Positions 14,439 through 57,086 of a stretch of 64,000 nucleotides of DNA are shown piece by piece (the stretch's first letter is position 1; each line of letters starts with the position of its first letter). The translations under genes and the position numbers were made by a program. The notes under the pieces were generated by a model, which was given only the letters and a program-made list of their open reading frames with translations, made no database searches and had not been told where the DNA came from. The DNA comes from Oculina patagonica (Eukaryota): contig NC_135769.1 of assembly GCF_052425735.1 (NCBI RefSeq), positions 17,360,001-17,424,000 of the forward strand, given 5' to 3'.

Positions 14439-14767
14439 ATGGAGCTATACGAGAGAATGCAAGAACGTACACATCGCGAGTATCATAAGGATCCGCGCCG
14501 GGATATTTTCGCGAATGGCGCCTTTCATGATGGCATTTCGACGGCCGCAGACAGTGACGAAAATTTGGCGCACAAAAAGGGTCTCAAAGAGCACAGTAGC
14601 GTTTATACGTTTGTATGGACGTTGCTGTTTGCGGTTGTTTTAATTGTGGAGAACATTTTTCACTTTAAACTCTTCGAAAACTGCCAAGCGTCTATCGTTT
14701 TCTACTGGTTGGAAAGTTGTGTTATTGCTCTGTTCTTCAGATTTTGGGGAAGAAAACGAGTCCGAAG
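14439..14767 (+). other. Second orphan duplicate of transporter exon 1
   Basis: Same translation as 5619..5947; donor AG|GTACGT intact. Confidence 0.75.
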
Positions 14768-19320: not shown

Positions 19321-22300
19321 GGTTTCTAGCTAGTTGGTGTAATGTGCAAGGTAAGGCACTTTGTTAATACAAGAATACTTACTCAGCTTTATCAAACAAT
19401 TATTCCCCACTTTCTTTGTTTCTTATTGTTGTCTAGTTTGGGGCAAAACTTACAAAAACAGCGTTAAATAAATGTTACAAAAGAAAGCCATTTGTCTAAT
19501 AATGTTTATTCTCTCAACTTGATGCTCACACTAATGTTGTCATCGCCCAGTTCTAATAAGTAAACCCTCAAGGACCCTGGTCAGCCATTGTTTTTGTTTT
19601 ACATACGGGAATTTCGGTACTATATTTTTCGCGGAGCGTGTCTAAACGAAAGAGATCACTGTGAAACTGCTAAATTTTATTAAACAGACTTCCAGTAACA
19701 CAACTTACAGCAATGCAACAAGGTTTTGCTTCGCCGGACAATTTTTATAATTTCGATGGCATCGAAAATGGCGGAGGGTGACAAGGGTCCTTTCCAGGGG
19801 CGGATACAGGGGGGGTGGATAGGGTGGATATCCACCCCCCATTTTTCAGTAAAAAAAAATTCGAAATGTCACTTTATTTGAAATAGAAAATAAATAAATA
19901 AAGAAAAATTAACTCTCGCTCATGCTGGTTGTTGTTACGCCACGTTTCGCCGTCTGCCGCCACTTAGGGTTAGGGTTAGGGTTAGGGTTAGGCCCTAATG
20001 GTCTGCCATCCACCCCCCCCCCCTTTTGAAATCCTGGATCCGCCCCTGCTTTCACGATCTCATTTGACTCTAAATCTTTTATGTTATGCATCATCGACTT
20101 TCGATTTGGTAGTCTTCTACATGTTCTAGGGATTTTCGAATCCTTTACATCTAGGTCTAATTTTCGCACAGATTATGGTTAAGTCAATATTTAGCGGATT
20201 TATTGGACGAAAATTTTGGAATGAAATGGACACTAGGCTACCAACATATTCTGTAATATTTTATTTTGCCTTCCTGTATTTTTTACTACAATAGTCTGTT
20301 GTATTTACAAACCTCTCAAAGTTCTGATATGTAAACTTTTACTTAGCTTTTTTATTCTATTGTCTCTCTTAGTTATAGCTCTCAGAGTTATTTTAGATGT
20401 CCAGTTACCATTTTCTAGTTTAGATAAAAAATGTTGTAAATAATCATATTTTAATTCATGTTACAAATAATTGGTTGTTGTTGCATGTTGTTGTTGCTGC
20501 TGACCACTCTGAAAATAACATTTTCCCACGATCTGCAATTGAAGGAGCGAAAAAAATTGAAGATATAATCGAAACTCACAAAAAAATAGTGACAAAGGAA
20601 TACAATATTAGAACAATTTTTTGCTTTCACTAACAACTTGTTCTTGAAAACCTTATTTACAAGGAAATTCGACCACAAATCGACCGAGGCAAACACAGAC
20701 CTTCTTTTCCGTCTTTAGAGTCTTTGAGAGCGCAAGCATGGCAAAAACCGTGTTCAAAATTTTAAGTTCAAATGGATGTCAAAAAGGATGTTGGAACAAT
20801 ACTACAAAAGCTACACGAGACCTCAAACTTCTTTCATCTTCCTACATTTCAATCATCCTCAATGTGGTCGTTACAGTCAGCATAAGGAACAGCGCCAAAC
20901 TCCTGGGCTGGTCGGAACAACTTTGTAGATCTCCACCAGTCCTCTAAATTATACCTCTCTAACAGTTCATATAAATTCTTCCAGAAAATATATATCATAT
21001 CATCAGCAACTAGAATTGGTCTGTCATAATCTCTGGCTTCTTTCCTGCTTGGTCTACATTTTGCGGACCATGGCTTAGGTGGATGGTAGCGTGGACCACC
21101 GGCAAAATGGAAAGAGTTCAGGGGTCTGTAGATAATGAGTCTGATGTTGAATGAAAAGGGTAGTACCTTCCAGTTACCAGCATCAGCATCAGGACAAGTA
21201 TCTATTTTTGTTGTTTCCCGCCACAGGTCCATAATTTCCTGGTAGTACTTGGTGTCTGGTCTGAAAACCAGGAGTCCTGCATTGAAGCATGGATCCACTA
21301 TTCCTGGTCGGGCACAAGGTGCAGCAGCAAAGTCGTCTGGAATGTCGAACAGTCGATCAATGTTTGTCATCAATATGTAATCAGCATCAACATAAATGAT
21401 TTTGGAAAATTCTGTGTAGTTCCAGGCGTGGAATCGAGTGTGTGTTCCCTTTATTCTGTATCCAAGTGGCTTCCCAAGCCACCCACTGTTGCGGTCACCA
21501 CCCAATTTAGCATCCAGCCAGTTACAGTCCATTTCTTCAACCAAACGAGTGTTCCAACCAACGCTTTGAAGCGCTTTCCGTGTAGCCTCGCTCACTGTTT
21601 CCGAAATTAACGCGATCATGTTCTTCTGGCAAGAAAACGTGCGTATTGAGTGACCAAGAACCAACGCAGCGGAAGCAAAATTCTCGTCGACCACGATGGT
21701 CAGCCATGTAACGTCGCTTCTAGATTTCACGTTCTCTTTGCACCAATCTTGGCCAAAACGACTTTCAATTTGATACATTCTCCATTCCTTGTCGGCCAGC
21801 TCCATTTTGTTCTCTTCACGCCTCTGCTCAAAGTTCATAGCTTCTGAAATAATCAACCTTGAGTATCTGAAGAAATACGGAAGAAAGAGCGGTCTCCACA
21901 CAACGAGAAAAATCACCAGAGTTAAGATCGGTATGAGTGTTATGGCGCAGATTGTTCGACGGGTTCCTTTCTTTTTTTGTTCGTACATTCTCCATAGTTT
22001 GGGGTGATTCGGGTTGTTTACTCGACGAAGAACGTAACATTTTTCAACGAATACCTCAATGGCGTAGGTTTATTTTTTTGGCGGAATCCACTAGCACAGT
22101 ACTAGCGTTGCGCACCATCGATCAGTCAGTCGTATGCAGCAGTCCGAGACATTCCTTCTTTTTCAAACTGTCTTCTCTTTTAAATATTTTAAGGTCAGTT
22201 GAAATCGTAATGAAACATTTACGTAAATTAAAATTTTCAATTAAAAGTTTGGTCTCTGGTGAGAGTGGCGTGATCTCATGGGTCTGACGTCATATCCATT

Positions 22301-26637: not shown

Positions 26638-27810
26638 TCAATCATCCTTCATGTGGTCGTTACAGTCAGCATAAGGAACAGAGCCAAACTCCTGGGCTGG
26701 TCGAAACAACTTTGTAGATCTCCACCAGTTCTCTAAATTATACTTCTTTAGCAGTTCATATAAATTCTTCCAGAAAATATATATCATATCATCAGCAACT
26801 AGAATTGGTCTGTCATAATCTCTGGCTTCTTTTCTGCTTGGTCTACATTTTGCAGACCATGGCTTAGGTGGATGGTAGTGTGGAGCTACAGCAAAATGGA
26901 AAGAGTTCAGAGGTCTGTAGATAATAAGTCTGACATTGAATGAAAAGGGTAGTGCCTTCCAGTTACCAGCATCAGCATAATAATGCCACAGCAAAACCTG
27001 ATCATCAGGACAAGTATCTATTCGTGTTGTTTCCAGCCACAGGTTCATAATTTCTTGGTAGTACTTCGCATCTGGTCTGAATACCAGAAATCCTGCATTG
27101 AAGGCTGGGTTTACCACACCGGGTCTTGAGGAGGGTGCAGCAGCGAAGTCATATGGAATGTCGAACAGTTGATCAATGTTTGTCATCAACATGTAATCAG
27201 CATCAACATAAATGATTTTGGAAAATTCTGTGTAGTTCCAGGCGTGGAATCGAGTGTGTGTTCCCTTTATTCTGTATCCAAGTGGCTTCCCAAGCCACCC
27301 ACTGTTGCGGTCACCTCCCAATTTAGCATCTAGCCAGTTACAGTCCATTTCTTCAACCAAACGAGTGTTCCAACCAACGCTCTGCAGTGCTTTCCGTGTA
27401 GCCTCGCTCACTGTTTCCGAAATTAACGCGATCATGTTCTTCTGGCAAGAAAATGTGCGAATGGAGTGACCAAGAACCAACGCAGCAGAGGCAAAATTCT
27501 CGTCGACCACGATGGTCAGCCATGTAACGTCGCTTTTAGATTTCACGTTCTCTCTGCACCAATCTTGGCCAAAACGACTTTCAATTTGATACATTCTCCA
27601 TTCCTTGTGAGCCAGCTCTAGTTTGTTCTCCTCAAGCCTCTGCTCATAATTCGTAGCTTCTGAAATAATCAACCTCGTGTATCTGAAGAAATATGGAAGA
27701 AAGAGCGGTCTCCACACAACGAGAAAAATCACCACAGTTAAGATCGGAATGAGTGTTATGGCGAAGATTGTTCGACGTGTTCCTTTCTTTCGTGTTCGTA
27801 CACTCTCCAT
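26638..27810 (-). CDS. GT8-family glycosyltransferase copy 4 (390 aa, diverged paralog)
   Basis: Intact ORF with TM anchor, DAD, FNAG, DDQ and KPW motifs. The upstream ATG used in copies 1-3 was removed by a 15-bp deletion at ~27849. Confidence 0.9.
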   Translation of the reverse strand: MESVRTRKKGTRRTIFAITLIPILTVVIFLVVWRPLFLPYFFRYTRLIISEATNYEQRLEENKLELAHKEWRMYQIESRFGQDWCRENVKSKSDVTWLTIVVDENFASAALVLGHSIRTFSCQKNMIALISETVSEATRKALQSVGWNTRLVEEMDCNWLDAKLGGDRNSGWLGKPLGYRIKGTHTRFHAWNYTEFSKIIYVDADYMLMTNIDQLFDIPYDFAAAPSSRPGVVNPAFNAGFLVFRPDAKYYQEIMNLWLETTRIDTCPDDQVLLWHYYADAGNWKALPFSFNVRLIIYRPLNSFHFAVAPHYHPPKPWSAKCRPSRKEARDYDRPILVADDMIYIFWKNLYELLKKYNLENWWRSTKLFRPAQEFGSVPYADCNDHMKDD

Positions 27811-28491
27811 ATTTTGGTGTGATTCGGGTTGTTTACTTGACGAAGAACGAATACCTCAATGACGCAGGTTTATTTTTTTTTTGCGGAATCCACTAGCGTT
27901 GCGCACCATCGATCAGTCAATCGTATGCATCAGTCCGAGACATTCCTTCTCTTTCAAACTGTCTTCTCTTTTAAATATTTTAAGGTTCGTTAAATCGTAA
28001 TGAAACACTGTAGGAAAACGAGAAATGGCAATAGCAACGTTTAAGGAAGTCTTTAATGATTTACGTAAATTAAATTTTCAATTAAAAGTTTGGTCTCTGG
28101 TGAGAGTGGCGTGATCTTACTGCTCTGACGTCATATCCATACAAAACACAATGCTTATTGTTCGTATAGCCAGCTTTTTCATAAGAAAGTTTCGCACAAG
28201 ATTTCACAGTTTTTGCACAAATTGGGATAAAACATAAATTTTAGCCAATCAGAGCGTGCGCAAAACTCAATCGTGAGAGAAAATATCACTTAATTCCAGC
28301 GAAACCCCACGAATTAGTGCCCAGGACTACTCGGACTTCGCATTGTGCGAAGAACGTGAATTTGCACATGTTTGTGATGTTTTAATACAACGAGAACCTA
28401 TTATCACCTGATTTTTCCTTGCTTACTCATGGAAAACTTATTGACCTACAACTGCCGGACTCGATACGTTGTTACTTAAGTCGTATACGGA
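27811..28491. promoter_or_regulatory. Putative bidirectional promoter shared by GT8 copy 4 and the complete transporter gene
   Basis: 681 bp between divergent ATGs; CRE palindrome TGACGTCA at 28126..28133 and CCAAT at 28245..28249, both conserved in all four units. Confidence 0.6.
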
Positions 28492-31400
28492 ATGGAGCTA
28501 TACGAGAGAATGCAAGAACGTACACATCGCGAGTATCATAAGGATTCTCGCCGCGATATTTTCGCGAACGGCGGGTTCGCCGTCCATGACATTTCGACGG
28601 CCGCAGACAGTGACGAAAATTTGGCGCACAAAAAGGGTCTCAAAGAGCACAGTAGCGTATATACGTTTGTATGGACGTTGCTGTTTGCGGTTGTTTTAAT
28701 TGTGGAGAACATTTTTCACTTTAAACTCTTCGAAAACTGCCAAGCATCTATCGTTTTCTACTGGTTGGAAAGTTGTGTTATTGCTCTGTTCTTCAGATTT
28801 TGGGGAAGAAAACGAGTCCGAAGGTACGTGAAATATAAGCTTAAAGTTCTTGGATATTATTAGGGAAAGAGGGAAGACCTTCACTGTAGAAAACCCTGCC
28901 ACCTGGAAGACTTGACCTAAAATTACGCTGCTTTAGAAGAGCAAGCTTAATAACAATTGAATCATCGGGCAATATTTCTCGTATTTTATGTATTATTTAT
29001 GAAGAATAACAAATCTCTAACGCCTGGTTCACATTTAATAACGGCAGAACGGCAAGGTCACGCAAACGCCAAACAACACAACAGGCGTAGTAATTAATCA
29101 ATAGAAATCGATATCGAAAATCATTCGATACATACTAGTTATGCAACGCTTTCGAGTGGTATACTATGGAATATCCCACGAGTCACTTGTATTTTCTCGG
29201 TATACACACGAGCCTTTAGGCGAGTGTGTATACCAAGAAAATACAAGTGACAAGTGGGATATTCCATATTATCACATATATAGCGAGAATTTTGGGCAAT
29301 AAATCTCCCAAATAGATTTCTATATTTGCTATATTTCACATGTGAGAAAAGCGATACGTCCAATCAGCTTCGCGTATAGCTTTCTTCACATGTGAAAAAT
29401 ATAACCAATCAGCATCTAGAGTGGAACGACCCAACCAATCAAAGCACGAGAACTCAAATGGTTTCCAACGAGGTTGAGCAAACAGCGAGCGGCAAGTTTG
29501 TTCCCTACGGCAGTTTATGCTTTGAAAATATGGCTACACGGTTTGTTCCTTTAAAAAACTTTGTCTTTAGAGTACTTTATGGAAAGGCAAGCAAACAGGA
29601 ACTCGCTAAGCAAAACCGAAAGAATACAGTAATGAGATTATAACAATAAAAATCATTCTTCAAAGGCGGAGCGAAGACAAGCGAAGTGTCGATACGTGAA
29701 AGCGAAGACAAGAATTTCTTCAAAACTTACAACACATCCGCGGACTTTCTAAGAATATTCAAGCACTAGCACCCTCGGGAACACCATGGTAAAGTAGATT
29801 GCATTTTTGAATGTGGATTTGCGTCGCAATTATTGCCTAATTAACTGACTCCTTGTATGTAATATCGCAATTTTGTTCAAAATTCGCCTGCGTGTTTAGT
29901 TGATTCGCTTGTGGCGACGCTTCCTCGATGCGATACCAAAACTTTTGCTTTCAAAAAGTAACGCAATGTGTTTAATTAAATAAAGTTTTTGCAGAAGATT
30001 TTGTTGGCAGTAATTTTTCTTATTTGATTAAAAGTGGTTTCGCTTGAAAAGCGATGTGCATTTGCCTGCTTTGTTTTTCCTACCGCTAGGTCAAACTGTA
30101 ATATGTCAAAGGTTTATGTATTACTTGACATGAAAAATCGCGTAAACTTTACAATGCTTGAATTCTCGTTATATATATAATAAACAAATTACAGCATAGA
30201 AAGTGTTTGAACGGATTTTTATTACTCGTTGCAAAACTTTGAAACTCTGTGCTGCTCTCGTTGTTTTATTTCGAAAAATCCGTACGTTGCACTTTCTATG
30301 AAGTAATCTATATGTATACCACGAGAAAGTGTTGTATAACTATTTTATACCATGCCATAGAAAATACGCTTACTAAATTTCGTCGAGAATACAATCGCAG
30401 CGCACGATGGGAAGGTTGGGTTGAATACCGTCGAATATACAACGGCTTTCCTGTATTCTGATTGGCTGTATTTTCTATGGCATGGTATAAAATTCGATAG
30501 CACTCGATATTGATTAATAACAATCGAACTTACAGAAAAAATATTATTGATTTTTATCCATTAGCAATAATCCACAATTCATCTTGCCGGGTACACATGT
30601 AGTCGATGACAGTTTGGAGTCATGTTGTTTTAAGTATATGACTATTTTTATGGACTGAAGATGTCATTATTGCTATTATTTGATATGAATGTAGGTCATT
30701 TTGCCCTCAAGTTGATAAGCCCTTGGTCAGACTGATATAATTGCAGGATAATGCCCCAGGCCGACAGATTGTCCAAAAAATTGAACAGTTGGCAGAGAGA
30801 CGATGCTTCGAAGGCAACTGAAATTTGGAGGAAAATCTTTTAACCAAGGGCAGCAAGGGCCTTATCCTCCAGCATATCAGCCATAAAAGGGGTTTGTTTA
30901 ATTTTTTACACCTCTGATTAACTTCTACAACATGTTTACCAGAACAATATTTCATTATTGTCCAAAGTCCAATATTCATGCTTTTTACCCTCTAATAACC
31001 GTTACATACGCTCACGTCAAACACATCATGCGGACAAAATTGGGCAACATTATTAGGCAGCATGCCCCAGCATTATTCCCCAACATATCAGCAAACCAGA
31101 AATTTGTTTATCTTAAACACCTTTGATTAATTTCTGCGACAAATATTCAGCGTCCAAGAGCCAATATAATTGTCACTAACACTCACGTCAAATACATCAT
31201 GCGATACGAAATTAGACAATTAATATCAAGCAGCACGCCCCATCATTATCCTTCAGCAAATCAGCAAGCCAGAAAGTGGTTTGTTTATTTAATACACCTG
31301 TGATTAATTTCTACGACATGTTTAATAGACAATAAGGCCAAAGGCCAATATATTTGTGCTTTTAACCGAACGATTATTATTGTTACAAACTCTTACGTCA

Positions 31401-34400
31401 AACACATCATGCATTACAGATTGGACAATGAATATCAGGAAGCACACCCCATCTGATTTGACATCTTGCTCAATTTCATAGAAGAGAACAAAAACAATCA
31501 TGGTTATGATTTAAGGCCTATTTTTTTAATCAAATCATGGTTAATGGCATGTCAAGAAATCTTTCAAGATCCAAAGAATCTACCAAAATATCCTTTTAAA
31601 GGATCTTTGGTAAGGGCTTGAAGATCTTGAACAGTCCTAATTCTCAAACTCATTAATACCATCATCAAATTAAAACAAAGAAAATCATAACCGTTAAGGA
31701 GATTTGGATACCCAGTCTTTATTGGCATAGATTTTTACGATTTTATTTTTCCATTTACTCCATAGTTTTAGTTTTGATTGAGAAGATATATTAAGATGGA
31801 ATCCACTAGGAAGTCGAGTAATATTTAAATATTAAAGTTGGACAAAAATCAAGTACCAGAATAATTTAAATCCTATTGCGTTATTTCCTACCCTTAATAA
31901 AAGATAAAGATGTAAGTAATTATCCGTGATATACACCAACAACAATTTCTTATCAGAGTCTGAGAAAATGAATTTCAAAGTTCACAAGGTATAGGCAAAA
32001 TCTCACGTGTAGCCATTTTGGAAATTCGTCTTAAGCGATTCAGTGGAATTCAGCGGAACTTCGAAATTTGTTTTCGATGTTTGGTGTTGTTAGAAAAGAT
32101 TTCTTTTGATAAGATATTTGAAGCAGTAACAAAAAAGTTTGCAATAAGGTGGAAATAATTCTGGTACAACAATTTCTTATCAGAGTCTGAGAAAATGATA
32201 TTCAAAGTTCACAAGCTATGGGCAAAAGCTCACATCTTTTAAGCAATTCATGGGAATTCAGTGGAACTTCGAAATTAGTTTTCGATGTTTGGTGTTGTAG
32301 AAAAGATTTCTTTCGATAAGATATTTGAAGCAGTAATGCAAAAGCTTGCAATCAGGTGTAAATAGTTTTGGTACATAATTTTGTCCAATAACTACTCGAA
32401 GTCCTGGCGGATTTCCTCTTAAACACTCAAGACAGTGTTTCATCGGCTATCCAAAAACCTCTAATTTCATCAAAAAATACTCCGCTGCGCGTCATATTTT
32501 CAACTCTCTTCTTGGTGTTTGGATATCCTGATAAAACACTGTCTCACCACAGTCACAAATAAATAGGGTGGCCCGCCAACACCAACGGTATTTGCATATC
32601 ATCACTAACCGTTAGTTGGCTTTAATCTAGGGCTGCAACGATACATTTTCTCACAATACGATACGTACCTCGATACAAGTGCCACGATACGATACACGAT
32701 ACGATACAACATTACATAAAACTGACAAGTGTTATAATTTTACTAATTTCTGTTGGTAACTCAGTTTTTTCCACTGTATCAGCAGCGAAACTTATTTGCA
32801 AAGTGAATTTTTCAGGAACCGCATGTTTTTGTTTGTGGGCACACAAGGCTGTGTCAGTCGACAACTAATTGTCGCATCTTTAAAGAATATGTGATCGGAA
32901 GTGAAGCAGAATGGAACTTCCTTGTCCCACAGGTTAACAAATCGCTATTGAGGGCTTTGACTTGGGTTAAAAAACAGTAAAAACAGTAATTTCTGAAAGT
33001 TGCTGAGGAATATTTTATTGTTTCACGATACTGCAATATTTTGTTCAAATACCGATATTCGTATCTTGACAAAAAATATCGCGATTCACCGGTGCACCGG
33101 TGTATCGTTGCAGCCCTACTTTAATCTCAGGAGGACTGGTATGCAGTTGGAAATACCAAGTTTTAATTTGGAATGGGAAGGTTGTCTGATACACCCAAAG
33201 TGAGACGATTTGACTATAGCACTTATAATTAACAAATTGACTTGAATCAATCAAATTGTCAAAACTTTTCTGCCTTGATGTTGACCTGTTATTCTAGAAT
33301 TCAATTTCCGCAACAGTTAGAAAACATAGGGGATCCACAATAAGTTCTACAGGATCCAAGATTTGACTTATTTGAAGGCCAAGATTCAGGATTTTTGATG
33401 GAAAAGGGAGCGAGATTTGGGGTTGAAATAATGAACTGGACACATGAATTGGCGATTTTACAAGGCGAGATTCAGGACTCCGGTGACAAAAAATAATGTG
33501 GTTGCATAGAAAATCAAGTTGTGATCTTCGTGAACACCGCAAAAAGCTGCACAAAGCATTTATTATGACTTACATGAGTTACCTGTATTTCCATGTGTGC
33601 CAGTTACATGGGAAAAAAGAAATAAGCTTACAGCTTATTGTCGGTGACCAAAGACTTCAAGACCAGTGCCGAGTGCAACACCCACTGCAAGTCTTTTTAT
33701 CCCCGGGGGGGGGGGGGGGGGGGGGCACTCAACAAAGTTTTGTATGGGGAGGAGGCTCCGCCCCGAGGTCCAACCCCTTACTCTTTTATGTACCATTTTG
33801 ACAGAAAAGGTACCCCTTTCATAAACCTTTTTTTTTTTTAAAAAGGTATCCTTTTCATATACCTAAATGATATTACTTATACCTAAAACAGGAAGTCTTC
33901 CTGTCAATTTTATGTAGCACTTAAAAAATTAAAATGATGCAGCCATTAGGTGTGTCTGTTTGAAATATTTCAATGGAAGGCCCTTTTAAATTACCTCGAT
34001 GACAAAATTCTGAAAATTCCCTTTCATATACTTAAACTTGTGAAAACCCTACCCTTTGCTACACCTGAAGAATAGGTCATTATAGGGAGTACTGCACGGG
34101 CTTTTAGTGTTGAGGCAAGGAATTAAGAAAAAATAAATGGTCGGGATCAGGGTAAGCCAAAAAAAACCTTCAGGATTATGGGATTTAGGGAAAATTTGTA
34201 CCAATCGCTCCTGTTACGAAGTCGGAATTTATGATCGAATGGAAAGTACCCCAACACTTCTAAATATTAATTCTCTCATTAATCTGAGGGCCGTGGGTTT
34301 GTCAGTCACAAGACTGTTAAGTGCAACCCTTGTCAAATAATGTCAATTTATTTTATTTTTATTTAAATACTAATAGATGAAATTTTTAATCCTTTATATC

Positions 34401-37400
34401 TTTTATTATTGTATTATTATATTGTAAATAGTTTGTTTTAATTTTTATGTCATTTTAGCTACTCTTGTCATTGTATGTAAATTATAATCAGTATTATTAT
34501 CATATTTTTTCACATGCACATTTTAACGAGCCTCATTGCTTCTCTGTGTTATGTGGGTAAATAAACTATTGTACTATATTGTATTGTTATTCTAAAAGAC
34601 TTGGGGGAAATAAGAAGAAAATTACCAACATTGCATAATTTTTGGCAAAGAGACATCACAAGGGGGTGGAAACTGGGAGAGAAAGGTACAGGAAGAGTAT
34701 GTTTGAGTACCCCCCCCCCCCCCCAACATTCTCTTCCCCAGAGCCTCTTAGCTGGCAGAACCTGGGGCACAAGGAACAAGTGGCTCTGGGGACCCATGAT
34801 TTGATTGACTAGAACTTTAACAAAGGAAATTTAAATCTTGCAAATCAAATCAGCTGTTTTAAAATTCCTATGTTTTAAAATGGTTGATTTGATTGGTTAG
34901 ATTTAAATTCTCTTTTTAAAAAATCTAGCCAATCAAATCATGTGTCCCCACAGCCACTTGTTCCTCATGCCCAAGGCTCTGGGGACGAGAATGAGGGCCC
35001 CCCCCCCAGGAACTAGTACAAAAAGCCCAGAAAAAGCTTGTCAGGATACCATAAAGTTCCTACAGTAATGAGGTAACAACCCTACAAAAGTAGAGATAAA
35101 ATTTTGGGATTGTTAGCAAATCCCAAAAATACTGATCATGACCCTCTAAAAGTAACAATTAATGCTCCAAAAGAAGTGACCTGAAACATGACTTGTTATT
35201 AAAGCAAACAGTGGAAATAACAGATAACACAAGCTGTACCAAACTGATCATTATTATTAAATGAGCCTTTCCCCAAGGCAGTTTGTACTGATGTAATACA
35301 AATTCTTTTGAACAAGATTTCTCAAATTCATCTCTGCATGTATTCAAAACATTTTTGATTTTAATAACACGGCTCCGCCTACACATGGTACATGTTAAAT
35401 AAATGAAAGTAGCCCCCCCCCCCTTCTAACTTATGAAGGAAGAAGGGTCATTCCTTTTGGACCTTTACTGTAATTCACCCCAGTAAATTTCTTTCTTGTT
35501 ATTAATCATGATAATTTTTTGTCATATTTTCCTTTTGCTGTTTAGCTTCAGGAGTCAAGTGAGCTATTTTGGGCCTCTTCTTTTCCTACATGTTGCTGTT
35601 GTCACTGCCTTTGGACTGGATTTTAATACCTCTCCATTTGGCCTTTCAGCCGGCTCTGAGTCATACCTGGTTTGTACCAATTTTTGTCATTATTTTAAAA
35701 TAGCTTTGAAGTAAGAAGCTTATGGTATATTATTAAATTCTCAACCTCGGATATTGCATTTCTAGCTTTCTGATTGGTTCACTGAATCCCGGTTATCAGC
35801 TTGTATACCTATGTTTGACCTTATATGGGAAATGAGTGCAGCAAGTGCCGCTCAGGGTAAAATTTTTCTGCGGGAAGCAACAGTTTCATCAGAACTCAGA
35901 GACTCAAAGGACAGTGCAGAATGCAATGGAGTCGACGACTGAAAGTATTGTTTTATGTTCGTGTTTATTTGCCTTATTTTACTTGCAATTAGATGTTGAA
36001 ACACCACTTGTATTCCTTCCCGAGTTTTTGTTACGCTAATCTTTGCAAACGTAACACGATTCTTCTGTTCGTTTGTAACAAGATACATGTACTTTTGTTG
36101 TTTTCCTTGAAAATGCTGTAACGTGACCCTTTGTTTATTTGTCTCTTTTTTTGTTTCACGGCGACATCGATGGCATTTGTCTTTCTTTCAATAATAAAGC
36201 CAATTATTTAACTTTAATTAAATTAAGTTGCGGTTTAAACTGCACGAAAGACGTTTCTCAAAAAGTAAAGAGCAAATCTAGTCAAAAACATCTCTTTCGA
36301 AAGGTTTTTTTAAAACGCAATACAGGTAGGATGTTTGTTTCCTGGTTATCAGGAGTTTCACGCCGAAAATCCCAGTGCAAGTTTTTGCATTCCTATTTAC
36401 GAAAGCGCTGTAAAAGTCTAAAAATCTAATTTAATTAATTTGCGGTTTTCACTTGGCGCCACGAAGTCTGCAGGAATCCTACCACAAACACGCAATACAA
36501 GCGATGTTCATGAGAGTTCCAGCAAAAAACGTAGACTACACTGCGCATGCGTTTGGCGTAAAGTACGTTGCCCTAAAACGTCGAGTAGTACCACAAGGAG
36601 AGCAAAGAGTTTTCTGAAACAAATATGTACTTTTGAGAATCTTTATATGAAAGTAACGTAGATGTGCTCCAGGTTTTACCTAGGGGTACGGTCAGGTGCT
36701 CCCCACCCGCACCCCCTCCACAAGAAATAATTAATTAATTGATATTAATTAATTAATTGGTGATTAAAAGTTTACACCGCGTTAGCGGTCTAGTGGTTTA
36801 GGGGTTTAGCAAACGCCAACCCACCAAACTATCACAATAGTGCATTCTGCACTAAAAATGGTTGAAAACAGCAAATTTGGCGAGCTTTATGAACAAGAAA
36901 TAATCAGCGGTGCCTACAAAACCACAGAAATGCCATAGTAAAATTAACTACGCAAAACAAAAGGATTGATGCAAAAAGTTTAATTAATAATACTTGTAAA
37001 TGCAATACAAGAGCGAGTGAATAAAGTAGAAAAGCAGCAAATAATTTACGAAAGAACAGCAAACTGACACAGTTTCATTCATTGTATGTCATAAAATTAG
37101 GCTCAGCACTTCTGTAAAGTTAAATACCTTTTAATCTTGGTCTTGTTCTTTTATGCTTCAATAAACCTGTTCCACTTTGAGGTCAATTTCGCTTCAAATA
37201 ATATAGCAGTCTTGATGACAGCCGTGAAGCCGTAAATTACAAGTACAATGTAAACACTTGCTTTGTTCTACTTGCACAAGATGTGTAGTTTCCAGAAAAG
37301 CTTTTGCTTCGGACCATCCTGTAAATCTTAACTGATGTCACAATTTCCAGAATATATAGACGACTTTAGAGGAGATTATTGGATGAAAATCTTGGGAAGA

Positions 37401-40400
37401 AAACTCTCTCACTCGCTTTCCTCGTGTGTTTCATTCAACTGAAGAAAGTGAACACCACGCCACAAATTTTCCCGCCCCCTCATACTATCACTTCATTTAC
37501 ATCGAACTGAAATGTCCAGTCGATTTAAACTTAAAGAAGAGTTTAATAAAACAATTATTCTATTCGCCCTTGTTGGATACAAGTCATTATAGCCAACTTG
37601 GCGCTTTGCGCCTCATTGGCTATTTACCACGTCGTATCCAATGCGGGCTCATAGAATAATTGTTAATTATATTACTGTATACTGTCAATGGGGTCATAGC
37701 GTTATCCATCCTTTGAACAACTGGTCTCAGAATGCTGACTGTAAGGTGTACTGGAATAATAAATTTATTAAATAGACTAACAAATTATACTTGTTGACAT
37801 TGTTCTCATTTCTTGCATTTTTCTCACTCCTACAGTATTGGAAAAATCCTACAAAACTCGTAAAAGATGTCAGACCTTCCAACTCTCACAATTTGGTTGT
37901 GAGACTCACGGTTTCAGGACATCTCACGGTCTCACGATTGAACCTCAAAATCTCACGATTTTCCACAATGAATTACAATCTCAATCAGATATGACCTAAA
38001 ATCAACTCGAATTATAAAATAATAGTTGCAAATACAAATCAGCTTGATTAAGAAGGATTAAATATTTGTAATGTCTGCGTTTCTTCTCACTGGGGAATTT
38101 GAACTGAGCTATTTTAAAAAATTGCACTACGAGAGGTCGAAGACTCTCATCGGTGTTTCAAGTCCCAAAGGGGAAAATGGCACTATTAAATTACAGCAGT
38201 TTGAACACTGCTAGGTTTTGTTAGCATTGAGATTCCTTTGTTTTAAAACATTTTTGTGAACCTAACTATTTGGGACCTCAAGATTTGGGGGTTTTAAATG
38301 TTGGAAGGTCTGAGATGTTCTTGTATTATCTGTAAAATCATCCAGTAAGGACCACATTATGCAGTACTCCTGACCAATATAGCTAATTAAAGTTTTCTAA
38401 TGTCTTTGTTGCAGGTAGCCTTAGCATTGACACCTCCTATCGTGTTAATAGCATCTTGGGTGACCAATCAGCATTATTACTCAGACAAGATTATTATATT
38501 GGTGACCACATCAAGTTCACTTCTCATGGTTCTGTTCTGTACATTTGAAGATGAACATGCTCATTACAGAATGTCATTTAGTCGTGGTGCTTTTGGTATT
38601 ATAATGGGTGCTTCTTTGGCTTTCTTTATTGTTCATGCGAAACGATCTCTGCCAAAGGTATGTGTTATGCTTGCAGGTTATTTGTAAAATTTATTACTAA
38701 TAATTGAAAAGAAAAGGATGTAAAAGACACTATGCAGGTCTTGTGAATGCACTGTAAACCTTGATATAGAAAAAGGCATTCTTGTATTTTAATATGAAAT
38801 AGGAATTAGAACAGGCATTCTGTTTGGTATTCATTCTATTCATTCTGACAGCATTCTTCATTTTAGTGATAATAAAAATATTGTTGTTCCAATGTGAACA
38901 CTCAAGATAATACCAAAGTAACAGCTTACTTGCTTAAACTGAGACAATGAGCATCTGTGTGCCATTTAAATGTGACTCTACCCTGAAAGAAAGAGAGGAA
39001 AGGAAAGCCTCAAGCCAAGTGGCCCATACTGCTGGAGCTCATCCTGTTTTTGATAGCATTAAACAGCTAGGAGTATTTCTACTCCCCCCTGAATGGGATG
39101 CTAGTCCATCGCCCCCAGCATTATTTTGCACAACACAACACAGGGACCCTAGCCAAGGCTCGAACCCAGGCCGTTTGATCCTGAGTCCGGCGTGCTAACC
39201 ATTAGCCCACTGCGCCTCCCAAAGAAAGATCAAAGGCTCTTCGAGCAACCTCATGGTAATTCGATGAAGTGGCGTCCTTCGTTTTCTTTTCAAATAAGCG
39301 TTCAATAATGTAACAGTCTCACTTCATTTGCCTTTAAATGCTTTTTTTTCATGCGAGTTGCGTCAGTGGGTCACTGATGCTTTGTGCTCTCCGGCTTCGT
39401 AGCGCAAATTCTATATTTTCACTACCAAAATAAAGTGTAACCTTTGAATATGTTTTTTACTCTCTTGGATGCGCCGAATTGCGTTTTCAATTACTTTTCT
39501 GCCAGCACATATATAATATACGTACCGGAGAGCGACAAGCGTTATGATCCGTTATTATTTTTTGAGCAGCCGATGAAATTTGAGAAAAAGATGCGCGTGA
39601 GCACTTTGTATTTCTGCTCGCCTCTATTTTTGTACATACAAGATGACGTGACGCAAAACAGAAACGTGCTATGCAACTCGTGTTTTTCCAGTGAGCTGAA
39701 ACGTTTACTAAATCACGTCACATGGCAAGCGAGACCGCATGTATTTTGTACCTGCTATCAGTATTAAAATCACATTCTCACTTCATTTCCCTTTTTGAAT
39801 GTTTTCTTTTTTTTCATGGGAGTTGCGTGAATGGGTAATTGATAGTTTGTGCTCTGGGGCTTCGTAGAGCAATTTTTTTTACCACTGAAAATGGATGATG
39901 TGACACGAGATGACGTGACGCGAAACAAAAACGTGCCGCGATATGAACTGAAACATGGCAAGGGAAATTGCATGTATCTCGTACCTGCTATCAGTAAGTA
40001 ACAATCTCACTTCATTTGCCTCTTAGAATTTTTTTTTTTTTTTCTACATGGGAGTTGCGTGAATGGCTCATTGATTGCTCGTGCTCTCCGGCTTCTAGAG
40101 CGAATTTTTTTTTAACCACTAGAATAAAGTGTGATAACCTTTGATCCTCTTTCGCATTTAGGATAATTTCTTTTGCAAATACTGATCAACCTCGTTTCCT
40201 GGAAGAGAGAGATCTTGGGAATGAATTTTTTTTTCACTTTTTGAAAAAGATAGGTCGGTCGGGCGATGGGAAACGAAACATTTTATTGGGATGGCCTAAC
40301 ACTGATACTTTAAATCACTAACAGACCAAAATCTACTCCGCAAAGAGACGAACAGCAGCACTTCTCAGCAAGAAAAAAATATCCTTTGTCATGTGCGTGT

Positions 40401-42909
40401 ATAACAGCACTTCTCAGCACTTTCATACGAAAAACGTCCTTTGTCATGAGCTTTCTCACACATGTACAACAGCACTTCTCGGCATGCGCGTCAATACGAA
40501 AAGCATGAGCTTTGTCATGTGACATTTACCGAAAAGCTTTCGTGGTGTTTATATGTCCTGTATGTCTTGTATGTACAATAATACAATAGAAGGAGGAACG
40601 CTTGCCTTTTCTCCCAGATCATAAAGCGTTCATCGGTATACTGCATTCTTCCTGCACCTCATCAATTCTTAGTCGTCCAAATGAACTGATGTAACTGATC
40701 AAACAGCTCAACAACCTTTGCTTTGAAGCCCATTTCTTTCCACTTGAATATTTTTCTGCATATTTCCTCTTCATTTCTAAGGTCTACAAAGGTGTATTTT
40801 GATCGAGGGTGGAGCGAACGAAATACTACCTTTGATATTATCTCGGCCCGACACGCCATTTTGAATTATGTTGATCTCTGTCAAGCAAACATTTGGCCTC
40901 TATCCCACCCCCCAGATATATGAACAGAACACAAGGGCAGGGAGGCAGGGGAAAACCGAAAGGACCTTTCCATCAGCACGTTTATCGTTTAATGACAAAT
41001 TAATTGCGGTTTGATATCAGAATCGAGTGAGTGAGTGAGTGTTCGAGTGAGAAAATGAGGCCAATAACATAACCTCATTACCATTCGGTAAAAATGGCCG
41101 GTTGAATTGTGTAAAACTGATTATTAAAGTTTGCTGTCCTATTTTTATTACAGGCTTCATATGCAGAGCTACTCTATATGTTCAATTTTAGCTGCGTCAT
41201 GTCTCTCCCATTTGTTGCCTTACTGTTTGGTGAATTACCCTTAATTGAAGGTGAAATACAAAAACGAGGAGCATTAAAGCTTATCTTCAGCATATTCATT
41301 GTGGTGAGTTCTACTGTACAAATTAACTTTGTTGATAGCCATGCATAGTGAAGTCATAATAAATTAATGATACTCTATTTATCACTCCAAAACTTTTCAG
41401 TAATTAATGATAATATAAATGCATCATCAAAATTGAAGTGCTCAAAAATAATTTTTGTCAAGCAGCCTTCTCTTATGAGTGGTTTTAAAATAATATTATT
41501 GATTTCATTAATACACCAAGAGAGGCATCCTTGCTTTCTGGCAGCCCGTTCCACAGTCGTACTGTTCCAAATAAAAACGCTGAACGCTGAGTACACTTAT
41601 AGGGTGGGAATTGTAACATGTTCCTATGTCTTGTATTACACAACAACAGTCATGATCAGGAAGCAATGGTAGATGTTTTCATGCTTTTGTAGGATCGGAA
41701 GACGACCAGTCATTTAGACATCAGGTTGCAGATGTACAACTGCATCTGGGTTTAAGCCAGACAGAGCTCTTGCATTTTTTAGTATTTTTTTGTTACTCTT
41801 ATAGTGCCTCTCCTGACCCAGCTGCATTTATAAATCAAAATGGTAGTTTCTTTTGCAGCTGTTATTTGGGTCAACCCTTTTACTTAGTGGAGAGACCCCC
41901 CCCTCCCAAAAGGAGAAGCATGACAAACTGTTAGTGCTATCTGACCACCTGCTGGGAATTAACCTGTCAACTTTGCCAGTCGGGGAACAAGAGTCGTATT
42001 TGGTACTTGAGAGTAATGAGCTCAAATGTTGTCACGTAATGAATGGCATAAAGCAACCATTGTAATTGTAACATTTCTTTATTTTGGCTTCATTTAAGTA
42101 AAGTAATTAATAAATAAGTTAATTTAAGTAATGCATTGTAACTCGAGGAATTATATTAGTTAATTTCAATTTTCTATAGAGGGAGTGCACAGACATTTAG
42201 TTCTTTTCTCTTTCTTATTTGTTATTTGTTAATCGTATTTATGTAGTGCCTTTGTTGTAAATAAAGTATTCATTAAATGCAAAAAAAAATAAAATAAAAT
42301 AAAATAAAATAAAAATATAGCAACTTGAAAATGGCAGGTTCAGTCTGGTGACTGGAATAGGCCCTTTGCACAACCCGGTTAATTACATGGTACACAGTCA
42401 GCGATGTTGGGCCCCAAGTTACCCAGTGGGAAATCCAAAAAACGGAACGTGAAGCTTGTCTGGTGGGAGTGTTCAACTGCCTGTTTTGCAGCGCAGCATA
42501 GCTGATTTTGTACCATGTGACCAGGTCATGCAAAGGACCTATTTGTTAGCAACTGGTACTCTTTCTCCTGATTGATACATACCTGTTCCATTTTCAACAA
42601 ATGACTCACCACTTTGTGATTGACACACTTAATTACTGTTAGTACAGCTGGTTATTAATTTTTGTACTGTTATTTTAGGCCATTCTACGTTTGGCGAGCC
42701 AGGCAGCTTGCCTTTATCATCTGAAGTACTCAACTCCACTGCTAAATGCCACAGTGCGAGGGTTTTCCTGGATTTGGATCACAATTGCTATTACTTTTAT
42801 TACCCCTGGGATAACAGCTGAGCTTGTGGTGCCAGTGCTATCTTCATTTTGGATTTATGGCTTTGCATCATTTTTACCGGCACTGTTTTCTGATTTTCCC
42901 TGGAAATGA
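28492..42909 (+). CDS. Multi-pass membrane protein, diverged SLC35/TPT-family nucleotide-sugar transporter (SLC35C1 GDP-fucose transporter-like), 5 exons, 359 aa
   Basis: Exons 28492..28823, 35546..35669, 38415..38657, 41154..41303, 42679..42909 all have GT-AG sites with compatible phases (1080 nt, no internal stop); about 9-10 hydrophobic segments. Segments GAFGIIMGASLAFFIVHAKRSLP, LLYMFNFSCVMSLPFVALLFGEL and LKYSTPLLNATVR align by eye with SLC35C1 segments recalled from memory ([63 protein letters not shown]). Confidence 0.75.
29132..30490. mobile_element. 1.36-kb non-autonomous insertion with terminal hairpins and no TSD (Crypton- or Helitron-like)
   Basis: Empty site CATTCGATAC|AATTCGATAG in units 1 and 2 (~6255, ~15075); long palindrome at ~29168..29268; inverted repeat TTATACCATGCCATAGAAAATAC at ~30345 and 30468..30490. 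Confidence 0.75.
32628..33118. mobile_element. hAT-type MITE, parental copy
   Basis: Perfect TIR TAGGGCTGCAACGATACA; TSD CTTTAATC. Confidence 0.85.
33701..34095. mobile_element. CCCGGGGG-terminated MITE-like repeat; truncated copies at 9476..9699 and 18296..18522
   Basis: CCCCGGGGGG...CACTC left end and a degenerate ATAGGGAGTAC right end; the duplication breakpoint of units 1 and 2 falls inside it. Confidence 0.5.
35730..37668. mobile_element. ~1.9-kb non-autonomous repeat with terminal hairpin in transporter intron 2
   Basis: Imperfect palindrome AAACAATTATTCTAT...GCCAACTTGGCGCTTTGCGCCTCATTGGC...ATAGAATAATTGTTAA at ~37549..37666; the left boundary is approximate. Confidence 0.45.
39001..39220 (-). 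mobile_element. tRNA-derived SINE (internally deleted)
   Basis: Minus-strand head GGGAGGCGCAGTGGGCTAATGGTTAGCAC...GGGTTCGAGCC (A/B boxes); homologous to 53594..53905. Confidence 0.7.
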
Positions 42910-43880: not shown

Positions 43881-43881
<1 letters not shown>

Positions 43882-43934
<53 letters not shown>

Positions 43935-51000: not shown

Positions 51001-51426
51001 CCGACGAGCATCCCCGTCCGTTTCATATGGGAGTCCCCCCCCCCGGGCACGTAGTTGAAATGTACAGTATTTCTTTGGCTTGATAATGTCAGAAAAATAT
51101 GCAAAACATCGATGACAAGTTTCTTAGGCCTTTTTGCATTAACAGCTAGTATGTGCAAAAATTTAGCTCAATATATTTTACGGACAATTTATTTAATTAT
51201 CATCTGTCACCATGCATTTCGCGTGGTAAGATAATTTGCTGGCCGCTTAATGGAGGTAAAAAACAATATAAATAATACACTTGCGATAGCAAAAAGGTGG
51301 CCGCGGCCGCTTAATAGAGGTGGCCATTGAATAGAGGTATCAAATACAGCAGTTTACTAACAAATAAGTCGGGACTTTGGAAAGTGGCCGCTTAATGGAG
51401 GGTGGCCGCTTAATAGAGGTCGGACT

Positions 51427-51484
<58 letters not shown>

Positions 51485-56645: not shown

Positions 56646-56826
56646 GAGGGTAGCAAAGGGTGGGTCGTGAACCTGTTTCACGCACAAATTTTCACAAAAT
56701 TCACATGTCACGCATGACTTCAAACAGCAGAATTCACAAATCACGCGTCTTTTCTAGCTATTTGCACGCGTCACGGTCTAACTTTTGCCCTTTACACGAG
56801 TCACGCATTAACCCTTTGCTACCCTC
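56646..56826. mobile_element. Small MITE inserted in a degraded minus-strand LINE remnant (~56420..57050)
   Basis: TIR GAGGGTAGCAAAGGGT / ACCCTTTGCTACCCTC; flanking AATCCA duplicated; internal TCACG repeats. Confidence 0.65.
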
Positions 56827-57086
56827 AATCCATTTCCACTTCCTTCGTTTTATCGTGATTGCTACATCTCCCTGTCCAGTTCTTACAGATCCTCGTTCGT
56901 GATGACATTTGGCCAAAAGATGCCGAGTATCTTGCAGAGTCTTTTATTCACAAACGTATGCACTTTGGAAAGCAGAGTTTTGGTTAGTTGCCAGGTTTAC
57001 GACCCGCATAGAAGTAATGATTTGACGTTAGAGTTGAATATCCTCAACTTCAGCTAACTTCGTCTTGAGGGGAAGGGCTCTTGCTT

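What the first reader, a model, noticed from the sequence alone, without database searches (positions are those of the whole stretch)
26638..42909. Head-to-head glycosyltransferase + nucleotide-sugar transporter module: a candidate two-gene Golgi glycosylation system
Seen: an intact type II membrane GT8 gene and a hidden 5-exon multi-pass gene start 681 bp apart on opposite strands. The ORF track shows only fragments of the second gene, but splicing gives a clean 359-aa protein. Established: lumenal GT8 enzymes need nucleotide sugars imported by SLC35/TPT-fold transporters. Inference: the membrane protein is a diverged SLC35C1-like transporter, and the pair is a co-regulated enzyme + substrate-supply (or enzyme + scaffold) unit, possibly making a lineage-specific glycan (mucus, skeletal matrix, glycolipid or symbiont-recognition surface). 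Functional clustering of this kind is unusual in animals.
Basis: partly seen in the sequence, partly recalled or inferred. Interest (0 to 1): 0.85.

Follow-up and report, generated by a model that had tools for sequence, protein, structure and literature searches.

The report
Coral glycosyltransferase beside orphan transporter-fold gene
In the stony coral Oculina patagonica, a Golgi-type sugar-adding enzyme gene sits back-to-back with a gene for a coral-only membrane protein that folds like a nucleotide-sugar/metabolite transporter; three coral genera share the pairing, but nothing yet shows that the two proteins work together.

Summary
The ORF at 26638-27810 (-) is an intact type II GT8 enzyme. 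A 5-exon gene starts 681 bp away on the + strand and ends at 42909. Its 359-aa product is identical to the GenBank/RefSeq protein KAL9956360.1 / XP_078347246.1 of Oculina patagonica ('hypothetical/uncharacterized'), so the gene is annotated, not hidden.

- The membrane protein matches no Pfam family or PDB sequence, even at E<=10.
- Its AlphaFold model matches every solved DMT-superfamily transporter at Z 16-24.5; the next, unrelated fold scores 7.7.
- A protein-language-model search points to the same clan.
- The fold is therefore SLC35/TPT-like, but 'SLC35C1-like' is too specific. The family was found only in stony corals.

The head-to-head layout also occurs in Pocillopora and Desmophyllum, with 2-5 kb gaps and no shared promoter motifs. 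It lies in a conserved block that also holds unrelated genes.

The GT8 gene is the last of a tandem array. Duplication copied the promoter and exon 1, and RefSeq isoform X2 uses a copied exon 1.

Enzyme-plus-substrate-supply coupling is plausible (about one in three) but untested. The one read-laying run failed, so no RNA-seq junction or co-expression test was made.

The parts
26638..27810 (-). GT8 copy 4: single-exon gene for a 390-aa type II membrane, glycogenin-like retaining glycosyltransferase
   Evidence: Intact ORF. PF01501 at 51.2 bits. Best solved relative is glycogenin-1, E 1.9e-23. The DxD motif D203-A-D205 and His311 align with glycogenin's DxD motif and a conserved His (Mn-binding His212, from memory); Pro299 falls where I place, from memory, glycogenin's acceptor Tyr195. 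Signal anchor at residues 14-32. dN/dS 0.15-0.28 against paralogues and orthologues.
27811..28491 (.). 681-bp divergent intergenic region, a candidate shared promoter
   Evidence: CpG o/e is 1.38 against 0.75 for the whole window. A TGACGTCA palindrome at 28126-28133 and a GCCAATCAG box at 28244-28252 are kept in all four GT8-copy upstream regions of the window. Neither is found in the Pocillopora or Desmophyllum intergenic regions.
28492..28823 (+). Membrane-protein gene, exon 1 (proximal first exon; isoform of 359 aa)
   Evidence: ATG and the donor AAG|GTACGT, 8/9 to consensus. The spliced product is identical to P0159.
35546..35669 (+). Exon 2
   Evidence: Acceptor TTTAG|C and the weaker donor CTG|GTTTGT. 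This is the only in-frame choice. Boundaries match the orthologue alignment and tblastn blocks in Pocillopora and Desmophyllum.
38415..38657 (+). Exon 3
   Evidence: Acceptor TTGCAG|G and donor AAG|GTATGT. 20 representative proteins match it at E<=1e-3, in register with residues 153-233. Several runs guessed to be RNA hold 0.95-1.00 of its words.
41154..41303 (+). Exon 4
   Evidence: Acceptor TTACAG|G and donor GTG|GTGAGT; orthologue alignment.
42679..42909 (+). Exon 5 with stop codon
   Evidence: Acceptor TTTTAG|G. The most conserved block of the family, LRLASQAACLY..STPLLN..GFSWIW.
5619..5947 (+). Duplicated exon 1, distal copy 1 (alternative first exon)
   Evidence: The translation equals the N-terminus of RefSeq isoform X2, P0142 / XP_078347247.1, and the donor GAAG|GTACGT is kept. 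It lies head-to-head with GT8 copy 1.
14439..14767 (+). Duplicated exon 1, distal copy 2 (alternative first exon)
   Evidence: Same protein sequence as copy 1, donor intact. Part of the 98.5%-identical repeat unit of about 8.8 kb.
3741..4958 (-). GT8 copy 1 (405 aa)
   Evidence: Intact ORF, 92% aa identity to copy 4.
12561..13778 (-). GT8 copy 2 (405 aa)
   Evidence: CDS identical to copy 1.
20849..21988 (-). GT8 copy 3 (379 aa, P0001); has the upstream region but no exon 1 copy
   Evidence: The repeat 20051-22620 = 25806-28459 ends just before the exon 1 ATG.
48069..58782 (+). Downstream context: two GST genes (GST_N_2 exons at 48069-48614 and 58237-58782). A fifth GT8 (P0010) and an ELG1-like gene follow beyond the window.
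   Evidence: Pfam. L005 overlaps window 58856-64000 at 100% and continues into GT8 P0010 and the ELG1-like gene.

Best explanation
The window is from Oculina patagonica chromosome CM126646.1, at about 17.36-17.42 Mb. It holds a tandem array of single-exon genes for lumenal, glycogenin-like GT8 glycosyltransferases. These have a type II anchor, an intact DxD motif and the metal-binding His, and are under purifying selection.

The last array member points away from a 5-exon gene for a 359-aa protein with ten membrane helices. That protein belongs to a small sequence-orphan family found only in stony corals. Its predicted structure is the DMT-superfamily transporter fold. That superfamily includes SLC35 nucleotide-sugar transporters, plastid triose-phosphate translocators, PfCRT, LicB and YddG.

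Most likely mechanism (inferred, not shown): it is a secretory-pathway solute exchanger working by the DMT rocker-switch cycle. I put about 45% on a nucleotide-sugar-like substrate.

The divergent GT8/transporter layout is old. It is shared with Pocillopora at dS above 1. Only in Oculina is the spacer short enough (681 bp, CpG-rich, with CRE and CCAAT boxes) to act as one bidirectional promoter.

Tandem duplication copied GT8, spacer and exon 1 together. The transporter gene therefore has alternative first exons, each paired with a GT8 copy, and the proximal GT8 genes lie antisense in its long first intron.

It is plausible that the transporter feeds a UDP-sugar to the neighbouring GT8 enzymes. 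I give this about one chance in three; no result here tests it directly.
For: Gene models:
- Exon model and identity to P0159 / XP_078347246.1.
- Isoform X2 uses a duplicated exon 1.
- Purifying selection: dN/dS 0.19 and 0.26 for the membrane protein and 0.15-0.28 for GT8.

Fold:
- AlphaFold2 model on a 12-sequence family alignment: pLDDT 70, pTM 0.69, eleven helices of which ten are membrane-spanning.
- Foldseek against PDB: the top 38 hits are all DMT members, TM 0.40-0.70.
- VIA-align: Z 16.4-24.5 over residues ~50-358 for 21 DMT entries, then a drop to 7.7 for MFS.
- AFDB Swiss-Prot and cluster hits are all TPT/SLC35/EamA. The best two-sided TM scores are UDP-Gal/Glc transporter 7 (0.66/0.72) and fly GDP-fucose transporter (0.68/0.71).
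- ESM-feature search: score 0.97 with 216 shared features; 10 of 10 top named clusters are in the DMT clan.

Synteny:
- Pocillopora L001: GT8(-), GT8(-), membrane protein(+), GST(+).
- Desmophyllum L006: membrane-protein exons (-) facing GT8(+).

Promoter features.

GT8 identity.
Against: - There is no sequence-level link to any DMT family. No DMT-clan Pfam hit at E<=10 in 12 members. No PDB sequence hit at E<=10. hhalign against a 5-sequence E. coli EamA profile gives 4% probability. No internal 5+5 repeat is detectable by sequence.
- The model rests on a shallow alignment, and about 20% of residues have pLDDT below 50.
- The substrate and the subcellular location are unknown.
- The spacer is 2.0 kb in Pocillopora and 4.9 kb in Desmophyllum, with no conserved motifs.
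- GT8 relatives exist in anemones and at other coral loci without this partner.
- The conserved block contains unrelated genes as well.
- No RNA-seq junction or co-expression data could be obtained.
Confidence: 0.7

Rival explanations
1. The two genes form a dedicated, co-regulated Golgi module: the DMT-fold protein imports the donor nucleotide sugar (or scaffolds the enzyme) for the neighbouring GT8 enzymes, which make a coral-specific glycan.
For: - A lumenal GT8 needs an imported UDP-sugar (established biochemistry).
- The partner has the transporter fold that does this job.
- The divergent layout is kept in three genera at dS up to about 1.2-1.5.
- Duplications copy the GT8, spacer and exon 1 as one unit, and a copied exon 1 is used in RefSeq isoform X2.
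- The spacer is CpG-rich with CRE and CCAAT boxes.
- Precedent recalled from memory and not found in the paper library: in Kluyveromyces lactis the GT8 GlcNAc-transferase gene MNN2-1 and the UDP-GlcNAc transporter gene MNN2-2 are contiguous.
Against: - No expression, localisation or transport data.
- The spacer is not compact and has no shared motifs outside Oculina.
- The GT8 family predates the membrane-protein family (anemones have GT8) and works at other loci without it.
- From general knowledge, corals should also have ordinary SLC35 carriers; this was not checked here.
Confidence: 0.3
2. Neutral neighbours. The adjacency is only slowly decaying microsynteny in coral genomes. The DMT-fold protein carries an unrelated solute, or is an orphan like SLC35E/F/G, and has no functional tie to GT8.
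For: - The whole block PALB2-like, GT8, membrane protein, GST, GT8, ELG1-like is conserved, including genes with no link to glycosylation.
- Divergent pairs are common in animal genomes (general knowledge).
- The fold match does not favour nucleotide-sugar carriers over choline, drug or amino-acid carriers.
- Canonical DMT sequence motifs are undetectable.
Against: - The orientation and immediate adjacency are kept over a long divergence.
- The best two-sided structural matches among reviewed proteins are TPT-type nucleotide-sugar transporters.
- Duplicated exon 1 copies stay intact and are used.
Confidence: 0.4
3. The ten-helix protein is not a transporter at all, but a fast-evolving coral-specific membrane protein of another function, and the DMT-like model is a prediction artefact from a shallow alignment.
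For: - pLDDT is only 70, and the five models range from 39 to 70.
- There is no sequence homology to any family.
- Two members give a weak 7tm_3 Pfam hit.
Against: - Z 24 over all ten helices, against 7.7 for the next fold.
- An alignment-free language-model search gives the same clan, 10 of 10.
- Hydropathy gives ten segments of the right spacing.
Confidence: 0.07

Closest known systems
SLC35 / TPT-type nucleotide-sugar transporters (e.g. yeast Vrg4 5OGE, mouse CMP-sialic acid transporter 6OH2, human SLC35B1 9I20, GDP-fucose transporter SLC35C1)
   Same: Ten-helix DMT fold over the whole protein (Z 17-22.5, TM up to 0.70). Similar size, with a short N-terminal tail predicted disordered. Eukaryotic, and a plausible partner for a lumenal glycosyltransferase.
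   Different: No detectable sequence or profile similarity. Found only in stony corals, whereas SLC35 families are pan-eukaryotic. Substrate-binding motifs could not be checked. Other DMT branches (LicB, PfCRT, TPT, YddG) match equally well.
Plastid triose-phosphate/phosphate translocator (5Y78) and bacterial DMT carriers (LicB 7PAF, YddG 5I20)
   Same: Top structural matches: Foldseek E 3.8e-5 for 5Y78, and Z 23.8 and 24.5 for 5Y78 and 7PAF.
   Different: Different kingdoms and substrates, 8-12% identity. hhalign against an E. coli EamA profile is not significant.
Glycogenin-1 and the glycogenin-like branch of CAZy family GT8
   Same: The GT8 copies match PF01501 and glycogenin-1 (E 1.9e-23). 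The DxD motif and the Mn-binding His are kept.
   Different: They have an N-terminal signal anchor, so the catalytic domain should be lumenal. Pro299 falls at the glycogenin acceptor tyrosine position (as I place Tyr195, from memory). The RefSeq name 'glycogenin-1-like' therefore describes similarity, not function.
Kluyveromyces lactis MNN2-1 / MNN2-2 (adjacent GT8 GlcNAc-transferase and UDP-GlcNAc transporter genes); recalled from memory, not verified in the paper library
   Same: A Golgi GT8 enzyme gene directly next to the gene of a DMT-fold transporter that could supply its donor.
   Different: In yeast the functional link was shown genetically and biochemically; here nothing is shown. The coral transporter-like protein is a sequence orphan, and the GT8 is a multi-copy array.
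Variable-first-exon genes made by tandem duplication (e.g. UGT1A, clustered protocadherins)
   Same: Duplicated promoter-plus-exon 1 cassettes upstream of shared constant exons. RefSeq isoform X2 uses a distal cassette.
   Different: There are only three cassettes, they differ by a few residues, and each is coupled to an antisense GT8 gene. Usage of each cassette was not measured.

Membership tests
DMT superfamily (Pfam clan with TPT, Nuc_sug_transp, UAA, EamA, SLC35F, CRT-like) | Ten transmembrane helices in the DMT arrangement | tested here: met
   Ten hydrophobic segments. The AF2 model has helices spanning 41-354. VIA-align aligns 251-305 residues covering model residues ~50-358 to every solved DMT fold at Z 16.4-24.5.
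DMT superfamily (Pfam clan with TPT, Nuc_sug_transp, UAA, EamA, SLC35F, CRT-like) | Structural matches specific to the superfamily, well above unrelated helical folds | tested here: met
   21 DMT entries score Z>=16.4 and the next entry (MCT1, an MFS carrier) scores Z 7.7. The Foldseek top 38 are all DMT. All 10 top named ESM clusters are in the clan.
DMT superfamily / SLC35-TPT (PF03151, PF04142, PF08449, PF00892) | Significant sequence-profile match to a family model | tested here: not met
   No DMT-clan Pfam hit at E<=10 for 12 family members. A family profile finds no PDB chain at E<=10. hhalign against an E. coli YddG/EamA/RarD/BioP/RhtA profile gives probability 4.4%, P 0.009.
DMT superfamily | Internal duplication (two 5-helix EamA-like halves) visible in sequence | tested here: inconclusive
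   hhalign of the N-half against the C-half gives probability 0.2%. The only matched stretch pairs helix 2 with helix 7, which is the expected register but is not significant.
Nucleotide-sugar transporter (functional class) | Conserved substrate-binding residues (e.g. Lys/Arg of TPT, FYNN and GALNK of Vrg4) and antiport activity in the ER/Golgi | not testable with these tools
   No residue-level superposition is available. Family-invariant polar residues inside helices (P0142 numbering: E71, E92, N243, R286, Q290) are candidates only.
SLC35C1 (GDP-fucose transporter) orthologue | Sequence similarity to SLC35C1 and a pan-eukaryotic distribution | tested here: not met
   An exhaustive HMMER search with exon 3 found 20 representatives. 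The word-based profile search found 18 proteins. All named proteins in either search are scleractinian 'uncharacterized' proteins. Structurally, SLC35C1 relatives are among many equal matches.
CAZy GT8 / Pfam PF01501 | Family model above the curated cut-off | tested here: met
   51.2 bits against 24.3, covering 250 of 253 profile positions.
CAZy GT8 / Pfam PF01501 | DxD motif and metal-binding His of the retaining GT-A site | tested here: met
   D203-A-D205 aligns with the glycogenin DAD motif, and H311 aligns with a conserved glycogenin His that I identify, from memory, as Mn-binding His212.
Glycogenin proper (self-glucosylating glycogen primer) | Cytosolic protein with the acceptor tyrosine (Tyr195 in human GYG1) | tested here: not met
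   N-terminal signal anchor at residues 14-32. Pro299 falls where I place, from memory, glycogenin's acceptor Tyr195.
Bidirectional-promoter gene pair (divergent starts less than 1 kb apart) | Short shared spacer, conserved across species | tested here: inconclusive
   Oculina: 681 bp, CpG o/e 1.38, CRE and CCAAT boxes kept in all four local copies. Pocillopora: 1,968 bp. Desmophyllum: about 4.9 kb. No shared motifs or blastn similarity. Transcription start sites are unknown.

The most novel reading that the evidence does not exclude
Stony corals evolved their own, highly diverged DMT-fold nucleotide-sugar carrier that works with an expanded array of lumenal GT8 enzymes as a genomically coupled glycosylation module. 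Each tandem duplication copies enzyme, divergent promoter and transporter first exon together, so transporter output scales with enzyme copy number. The module would make a coral-specific glycan, for example for mucus or the skeletal organic matrix.
Probability: 0.2. Interest if true: 0.7.

Novelty: new member of a known kind. Interest (0 to 1): 0.45.

Why it matters
A coral-restricted protein annotated only as 'uncharacterized' can now be placed in the DMT/SLC35 transporter fold. It has no Pfam family, so this is a concrete, testable functional lead for a lineage-specific gene. If it supplies the neighbouring GT8 array, it would be a rare animal case of an enzyme and its substrate carrier kept together in the genome, like the yeast K. 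lactis pair. It would also point to a coral-specific glycan pathway. If it does not, it is an ordinary conserved neighbour pair. The locus also shows how tandem duplication can create alternative first exons with antisense genes nested in the first intron.

Tried and rejected
- Pfam on single exons and on full-length orthologues: nothing relevant. A 7tm_3 hit in two members was judged spurious against the fold evidence.
- ESM atlas on exon 5 alone: uninformative, best score 0.55.
No junction or co-expression test was possible.
- The look-up of sequencing runs: only indirect support. Exon 3 is held at 0.95-1.00 by runs guessed to be RNA, which hold 0.15-0.45 of the mostly intronic 5.8-kb stretch.
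- PDB sequence search with the family profile: 0 hits at E<=10.
- hhalign of the family against five E. coli DMT proteins and eleven unrelated membrane proteins: the DMT profile scored best (27.3, P 0.009) but not significantly.
- Internal-repeat test: negative.
- Exact look-ups of the Montipora, Acropora and paralogous Oculina membrane proteins (P0150, P0153, P0144): not on record. Synteny in complex corals and at the paralogue is therefore unknown.
- GT8 loci in Acropora digitifera, Nematostella, two unnamed ENA coral assemblies and a distant Oculina paralogue: no membrane-protein exons within 10 kb, even with a profile search of six-frame translations.
- Literature: no paper on this coral pair was found, and the K. 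lactis 'contiguous genes' paper was not in the library.

Full report
**Where the window is from.** A locus fetched for a neighbouring GT8 protein (L005, Oculina patagonica GCA_052425735.1, CM126646.1:17,418,856-17,440,025) overlaps window 58856-64000 at 100% identity. The window is therefore about 17.36-17.42 Mb of that 33.5-Mb chromosome of a robust-clade stony coral.

- The ORF 26638-27810 (-) is intact and encodes 390 aa.
- It matches Pfam Glyco_transf_8 at 51.2 bits against a cut-off of 24.3. Its best solved relative is glycogenin-1, E 1.9e-23.
- The DxD motif (D203-A-D205) and a His (H311) at the position of a conserved glycogenin His (Mn-binding His212, from memory) are kept. A proline falls where I place, from memory, glycogenin's self-glucosylated tyrosine (Tyr195).
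- A basic N-terminus followed by one strongly hydrophobic segment (residues 14-32) fits a type II anchor with a lumenal catalytic domain.

On the + strand, the best GT-AG sites allow only one in-frame solution: exons 28492-28823, 35546-35669, 38415-38657, 41154-41303 and 42679-42909. These total 1080 nt and encode 359 aa. That protein is identical to P0159 = KAL9956360.1 / XP_078347246.1, 'hypothetical/uncharacterized protein' of O. patagonica. It aligns end to end with orthologues from Pocillopora, Montipora, Acropora and several transcript-derived sequences. The two start codons are 681 bp apart. The gene is thus real and already annotated; it is hidden only from an ORF list.

Both genes are under purifying selection. 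dN/dS is 0.19 and 0.26 for the membrane protein against Pocillopora and Desmophyllum, and 0.15-0.28 for GT8.

**What the membrane protein is.** By sequence it is an orphan.
- Exon 3, searched with HMMER against 1.84 billion representatives, found only 20 proteins.
- Full-length and profile searches found 13-18 proteins. Every named one is scleractinian.
- No Pfam family of the DMT clan appears at E<=10 in any of 12 members.
- The family profile hits no PDB chain at E<=10.

By structure the answer is clear.
- An AlphaFold2 model built on the 12-sequence family alignment has pLDDT 70 and pTM 0.69.
- In Foldseek its 38 best PDB matches are all members of the drug/metabolite transporter superfamily: triose-phosphate translocator, SLC35B1, Vrg4, CMP-sialic acid transporter, PfCRT, LicB and YddG.
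- A second aligner gives Z 16.4-24.5 over residues ~50-358 for all 21 such entries. The score then drops to 7.7 for an unrelated MFS carrier.
- AlphaFold DB matches are all TPT/SLC35/EamA proteins.
- An alignment-free language-model search gives score 0.97 with 216 shared features, and all ten best named clusters are in the same clan.
- Hydropathy gives ten segments.

The finer label 'SLC35C1-like' is not earned. Choline, drug, amino-acid, phosphate and nucleotide-sugar carriers match about equally. hhalign to a small bacterial EamA profile is not significant, and no internal repeat is visible by sequence. From general knowledge of GT8 enzymes, which use UDP-sugars, a GDP-fucose carrier would not be the natural partner in any case.

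**The surroundings change the picture.** The GT8 is copy 4 of a tandem array in the window:
- copy 1 at 3741-4958 and copy 2 at 12561-13778, whose CDS are identical to each other;
- copy 3 at 20849-21988;
- copy 4 at 26638-27810.

More copies lie upstream of the window, and a fifth lies about 4.9 kb beyond the window end, after two GST genes.

The repeat unit (1726-11298 = 10498-20125, 98.5% identical) carries GT8, the spacer, a copy of exon 1 and part of intron 1. The exon 1 copies at 5619-5947 and 14439-14767 keep their donor sites. Their translation is exactly the N-terminus of RefSeq isoform X2 (P0142, 358 aa), which joins one of them to exons 2-5. The transporter-like gene therefore has alternative first exons, each facing a GT8 copy, and the proximal GT8 genes lie antisense in its first intron.

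The 681-bp spacer has CpG o/e 1.38 against 0.75 for the window. It carries a TGACGTCA palindrome (28126) and a GCCAATCAG box (28244) that are kept in all four local copies.

**Is the pairing conserved?**
- Pocillopora verrucosa: the order is PALB2-like, GT8(-), GT8(-), membrane protein(+), GST(+), with 1,968 bp between the divergent coding starts.
- Desmophyllum pertusum: all five membrane-protein exons lie on the strand opposite a GT8, about 4.9 kb away, with a second GT8 behind it.
- Orbicella: the last exon of the membrane-protein gene, GST, GT8 and an ELG1-like gene follow in the same order as on the right side of the Oculina locus. The left side was out of reach.

The divergent layout thus predates the split of these robust corals (synonymous divergence 0.45-1.5). 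However, the spacer is long in the other two genera and shares no motif or blastn similarity with Oculina's. The conserved block also includes genes with no tie to glycosylation.

GT8 relatives at other loci have no membrane-protein exon within 10 kb, even by profile search of six-frame translations. These loci are in Acropora digitifera, two unnamed coral assemblies, a distant Oculina paralogue and Nematostella. The GT8 family reaches sea anemones, while the membrane-protein family was seen only in stony corals. The enzyme family therefore does not depend on this partner. Synteny in complex corals and at the Oculina paralogue LOC144633285 could not be checked because the exact look-ups failed.

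**Expression.** The indirect support is as follows:
- two independent annotations give the same model;
- orthologues come from 1.2-2.4-kb assembled contigs that encode the full protein and so must be spliced transcripts;
- exon 3 is held almost completely by runs guessed to be RNA, which hold far less of the intron-rich stretch.

**Reading.**
- Shown: an intact lumenal GT8 gene; a real, conserved, selected 5-exon gene for a ten-helix protein; a DMT fold by prediction; a divergent layout in three genera; and duplication of the promoter and exon 1 together with GT8.
- Inferred: the protein is a secretory-pathway exchanger. I put about 45% on a nucleotide-sugar-like substrate and about 30% on it serving the neighbouring GT8 enzymes.
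- The main rival, at about 40%, is that the two are merely neighbours in a slowly rearranging genome.
- A precedent for a true GT8-plus-transporter gene pair exists in Kluyveromyces lactis (MNN2-1/MNN2-2). This is from memory; I could not find the paper in the library.

**Verdict.** The fold inference is correct at superfamily level, and the functional module is an open hypothesis. The finding is a new, very divergent member of a known transporter superfamily in a conserved divergent pair with a GT8 array. It is of moderate interest and is mainly a good target for expression and transport tests.

Noticed in passing
window 1726-11298 and 10498-20125: A tandem repeat of about 8.8 kb at 98.5% identity carries GT8, the spacer, an exon 1 copy and intron sequence. 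The CDS of GT8 copies 1 and 2 are identical (dS 0).
   Followed up: partly
window 6252-9699, 15072-18522 and 30487-33930: This intron 1 segment is 98.4-98.6% identical between the repeat units and the proximal gene copy, while the adjoining GT8/exon 1 segment is only about 90% identical. The pattern is mosaic and suggests gene conversion or a second, younger duplication.
   Followed up: no
window 5619-5987 and 14439-14807: GenBank annotates an exon 1 copy as a separate 117-aa 'hypothetical protein' (ACROYT_G037823, P0158), while RefSeq joins such a copy to exons 2-5 as isoform X2. The two public annotations disagree.
   Followed up: partly
window 20849-21988 and 21989-22700: GT8 copy 3 (379 aa) keeps the upstream spacer with its CRE and CCAAT boxes but has no exon 1 copy. 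Its dS to copies 1 and 2 is only 0.03, although the flanks are 85-94% identical.
   Followed up: no
window 48069-48614 and 58237-58782: Two GST genes (GST_N_2) lie in tandem downstream of the membrane-protein gene. The same GST follows the orthologue in Pocillopora and Orbicella.
   Followed up: partly
L006 1015-1356 (Desmophyllum pertusum): The last exon of the Desmophyllum orthologue matches the family profile in two overlapping frames, and the public annotation calls only a 125-aa product. This is either a frameshift (pseudogene) or an assembly error.
   Followed up: no
P0148, P0149 (orthologues from transcript assemblies): Two family members give a Pfam 7tm_3 hit (best E 2e-5) that the other ten lack. 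It is probably a compositional match in membrane helices.
   Followed up: no
window 44001-48000: A composition outlier: GC skew up to +0.16, AT skew up to +0.24 and GC 0.41-0.45, just downstream of the gene. A poly-isoleucine low-complexity ORF lies at 43727-43990. This is probably repeat or transposon sequence.
   Followed up: no
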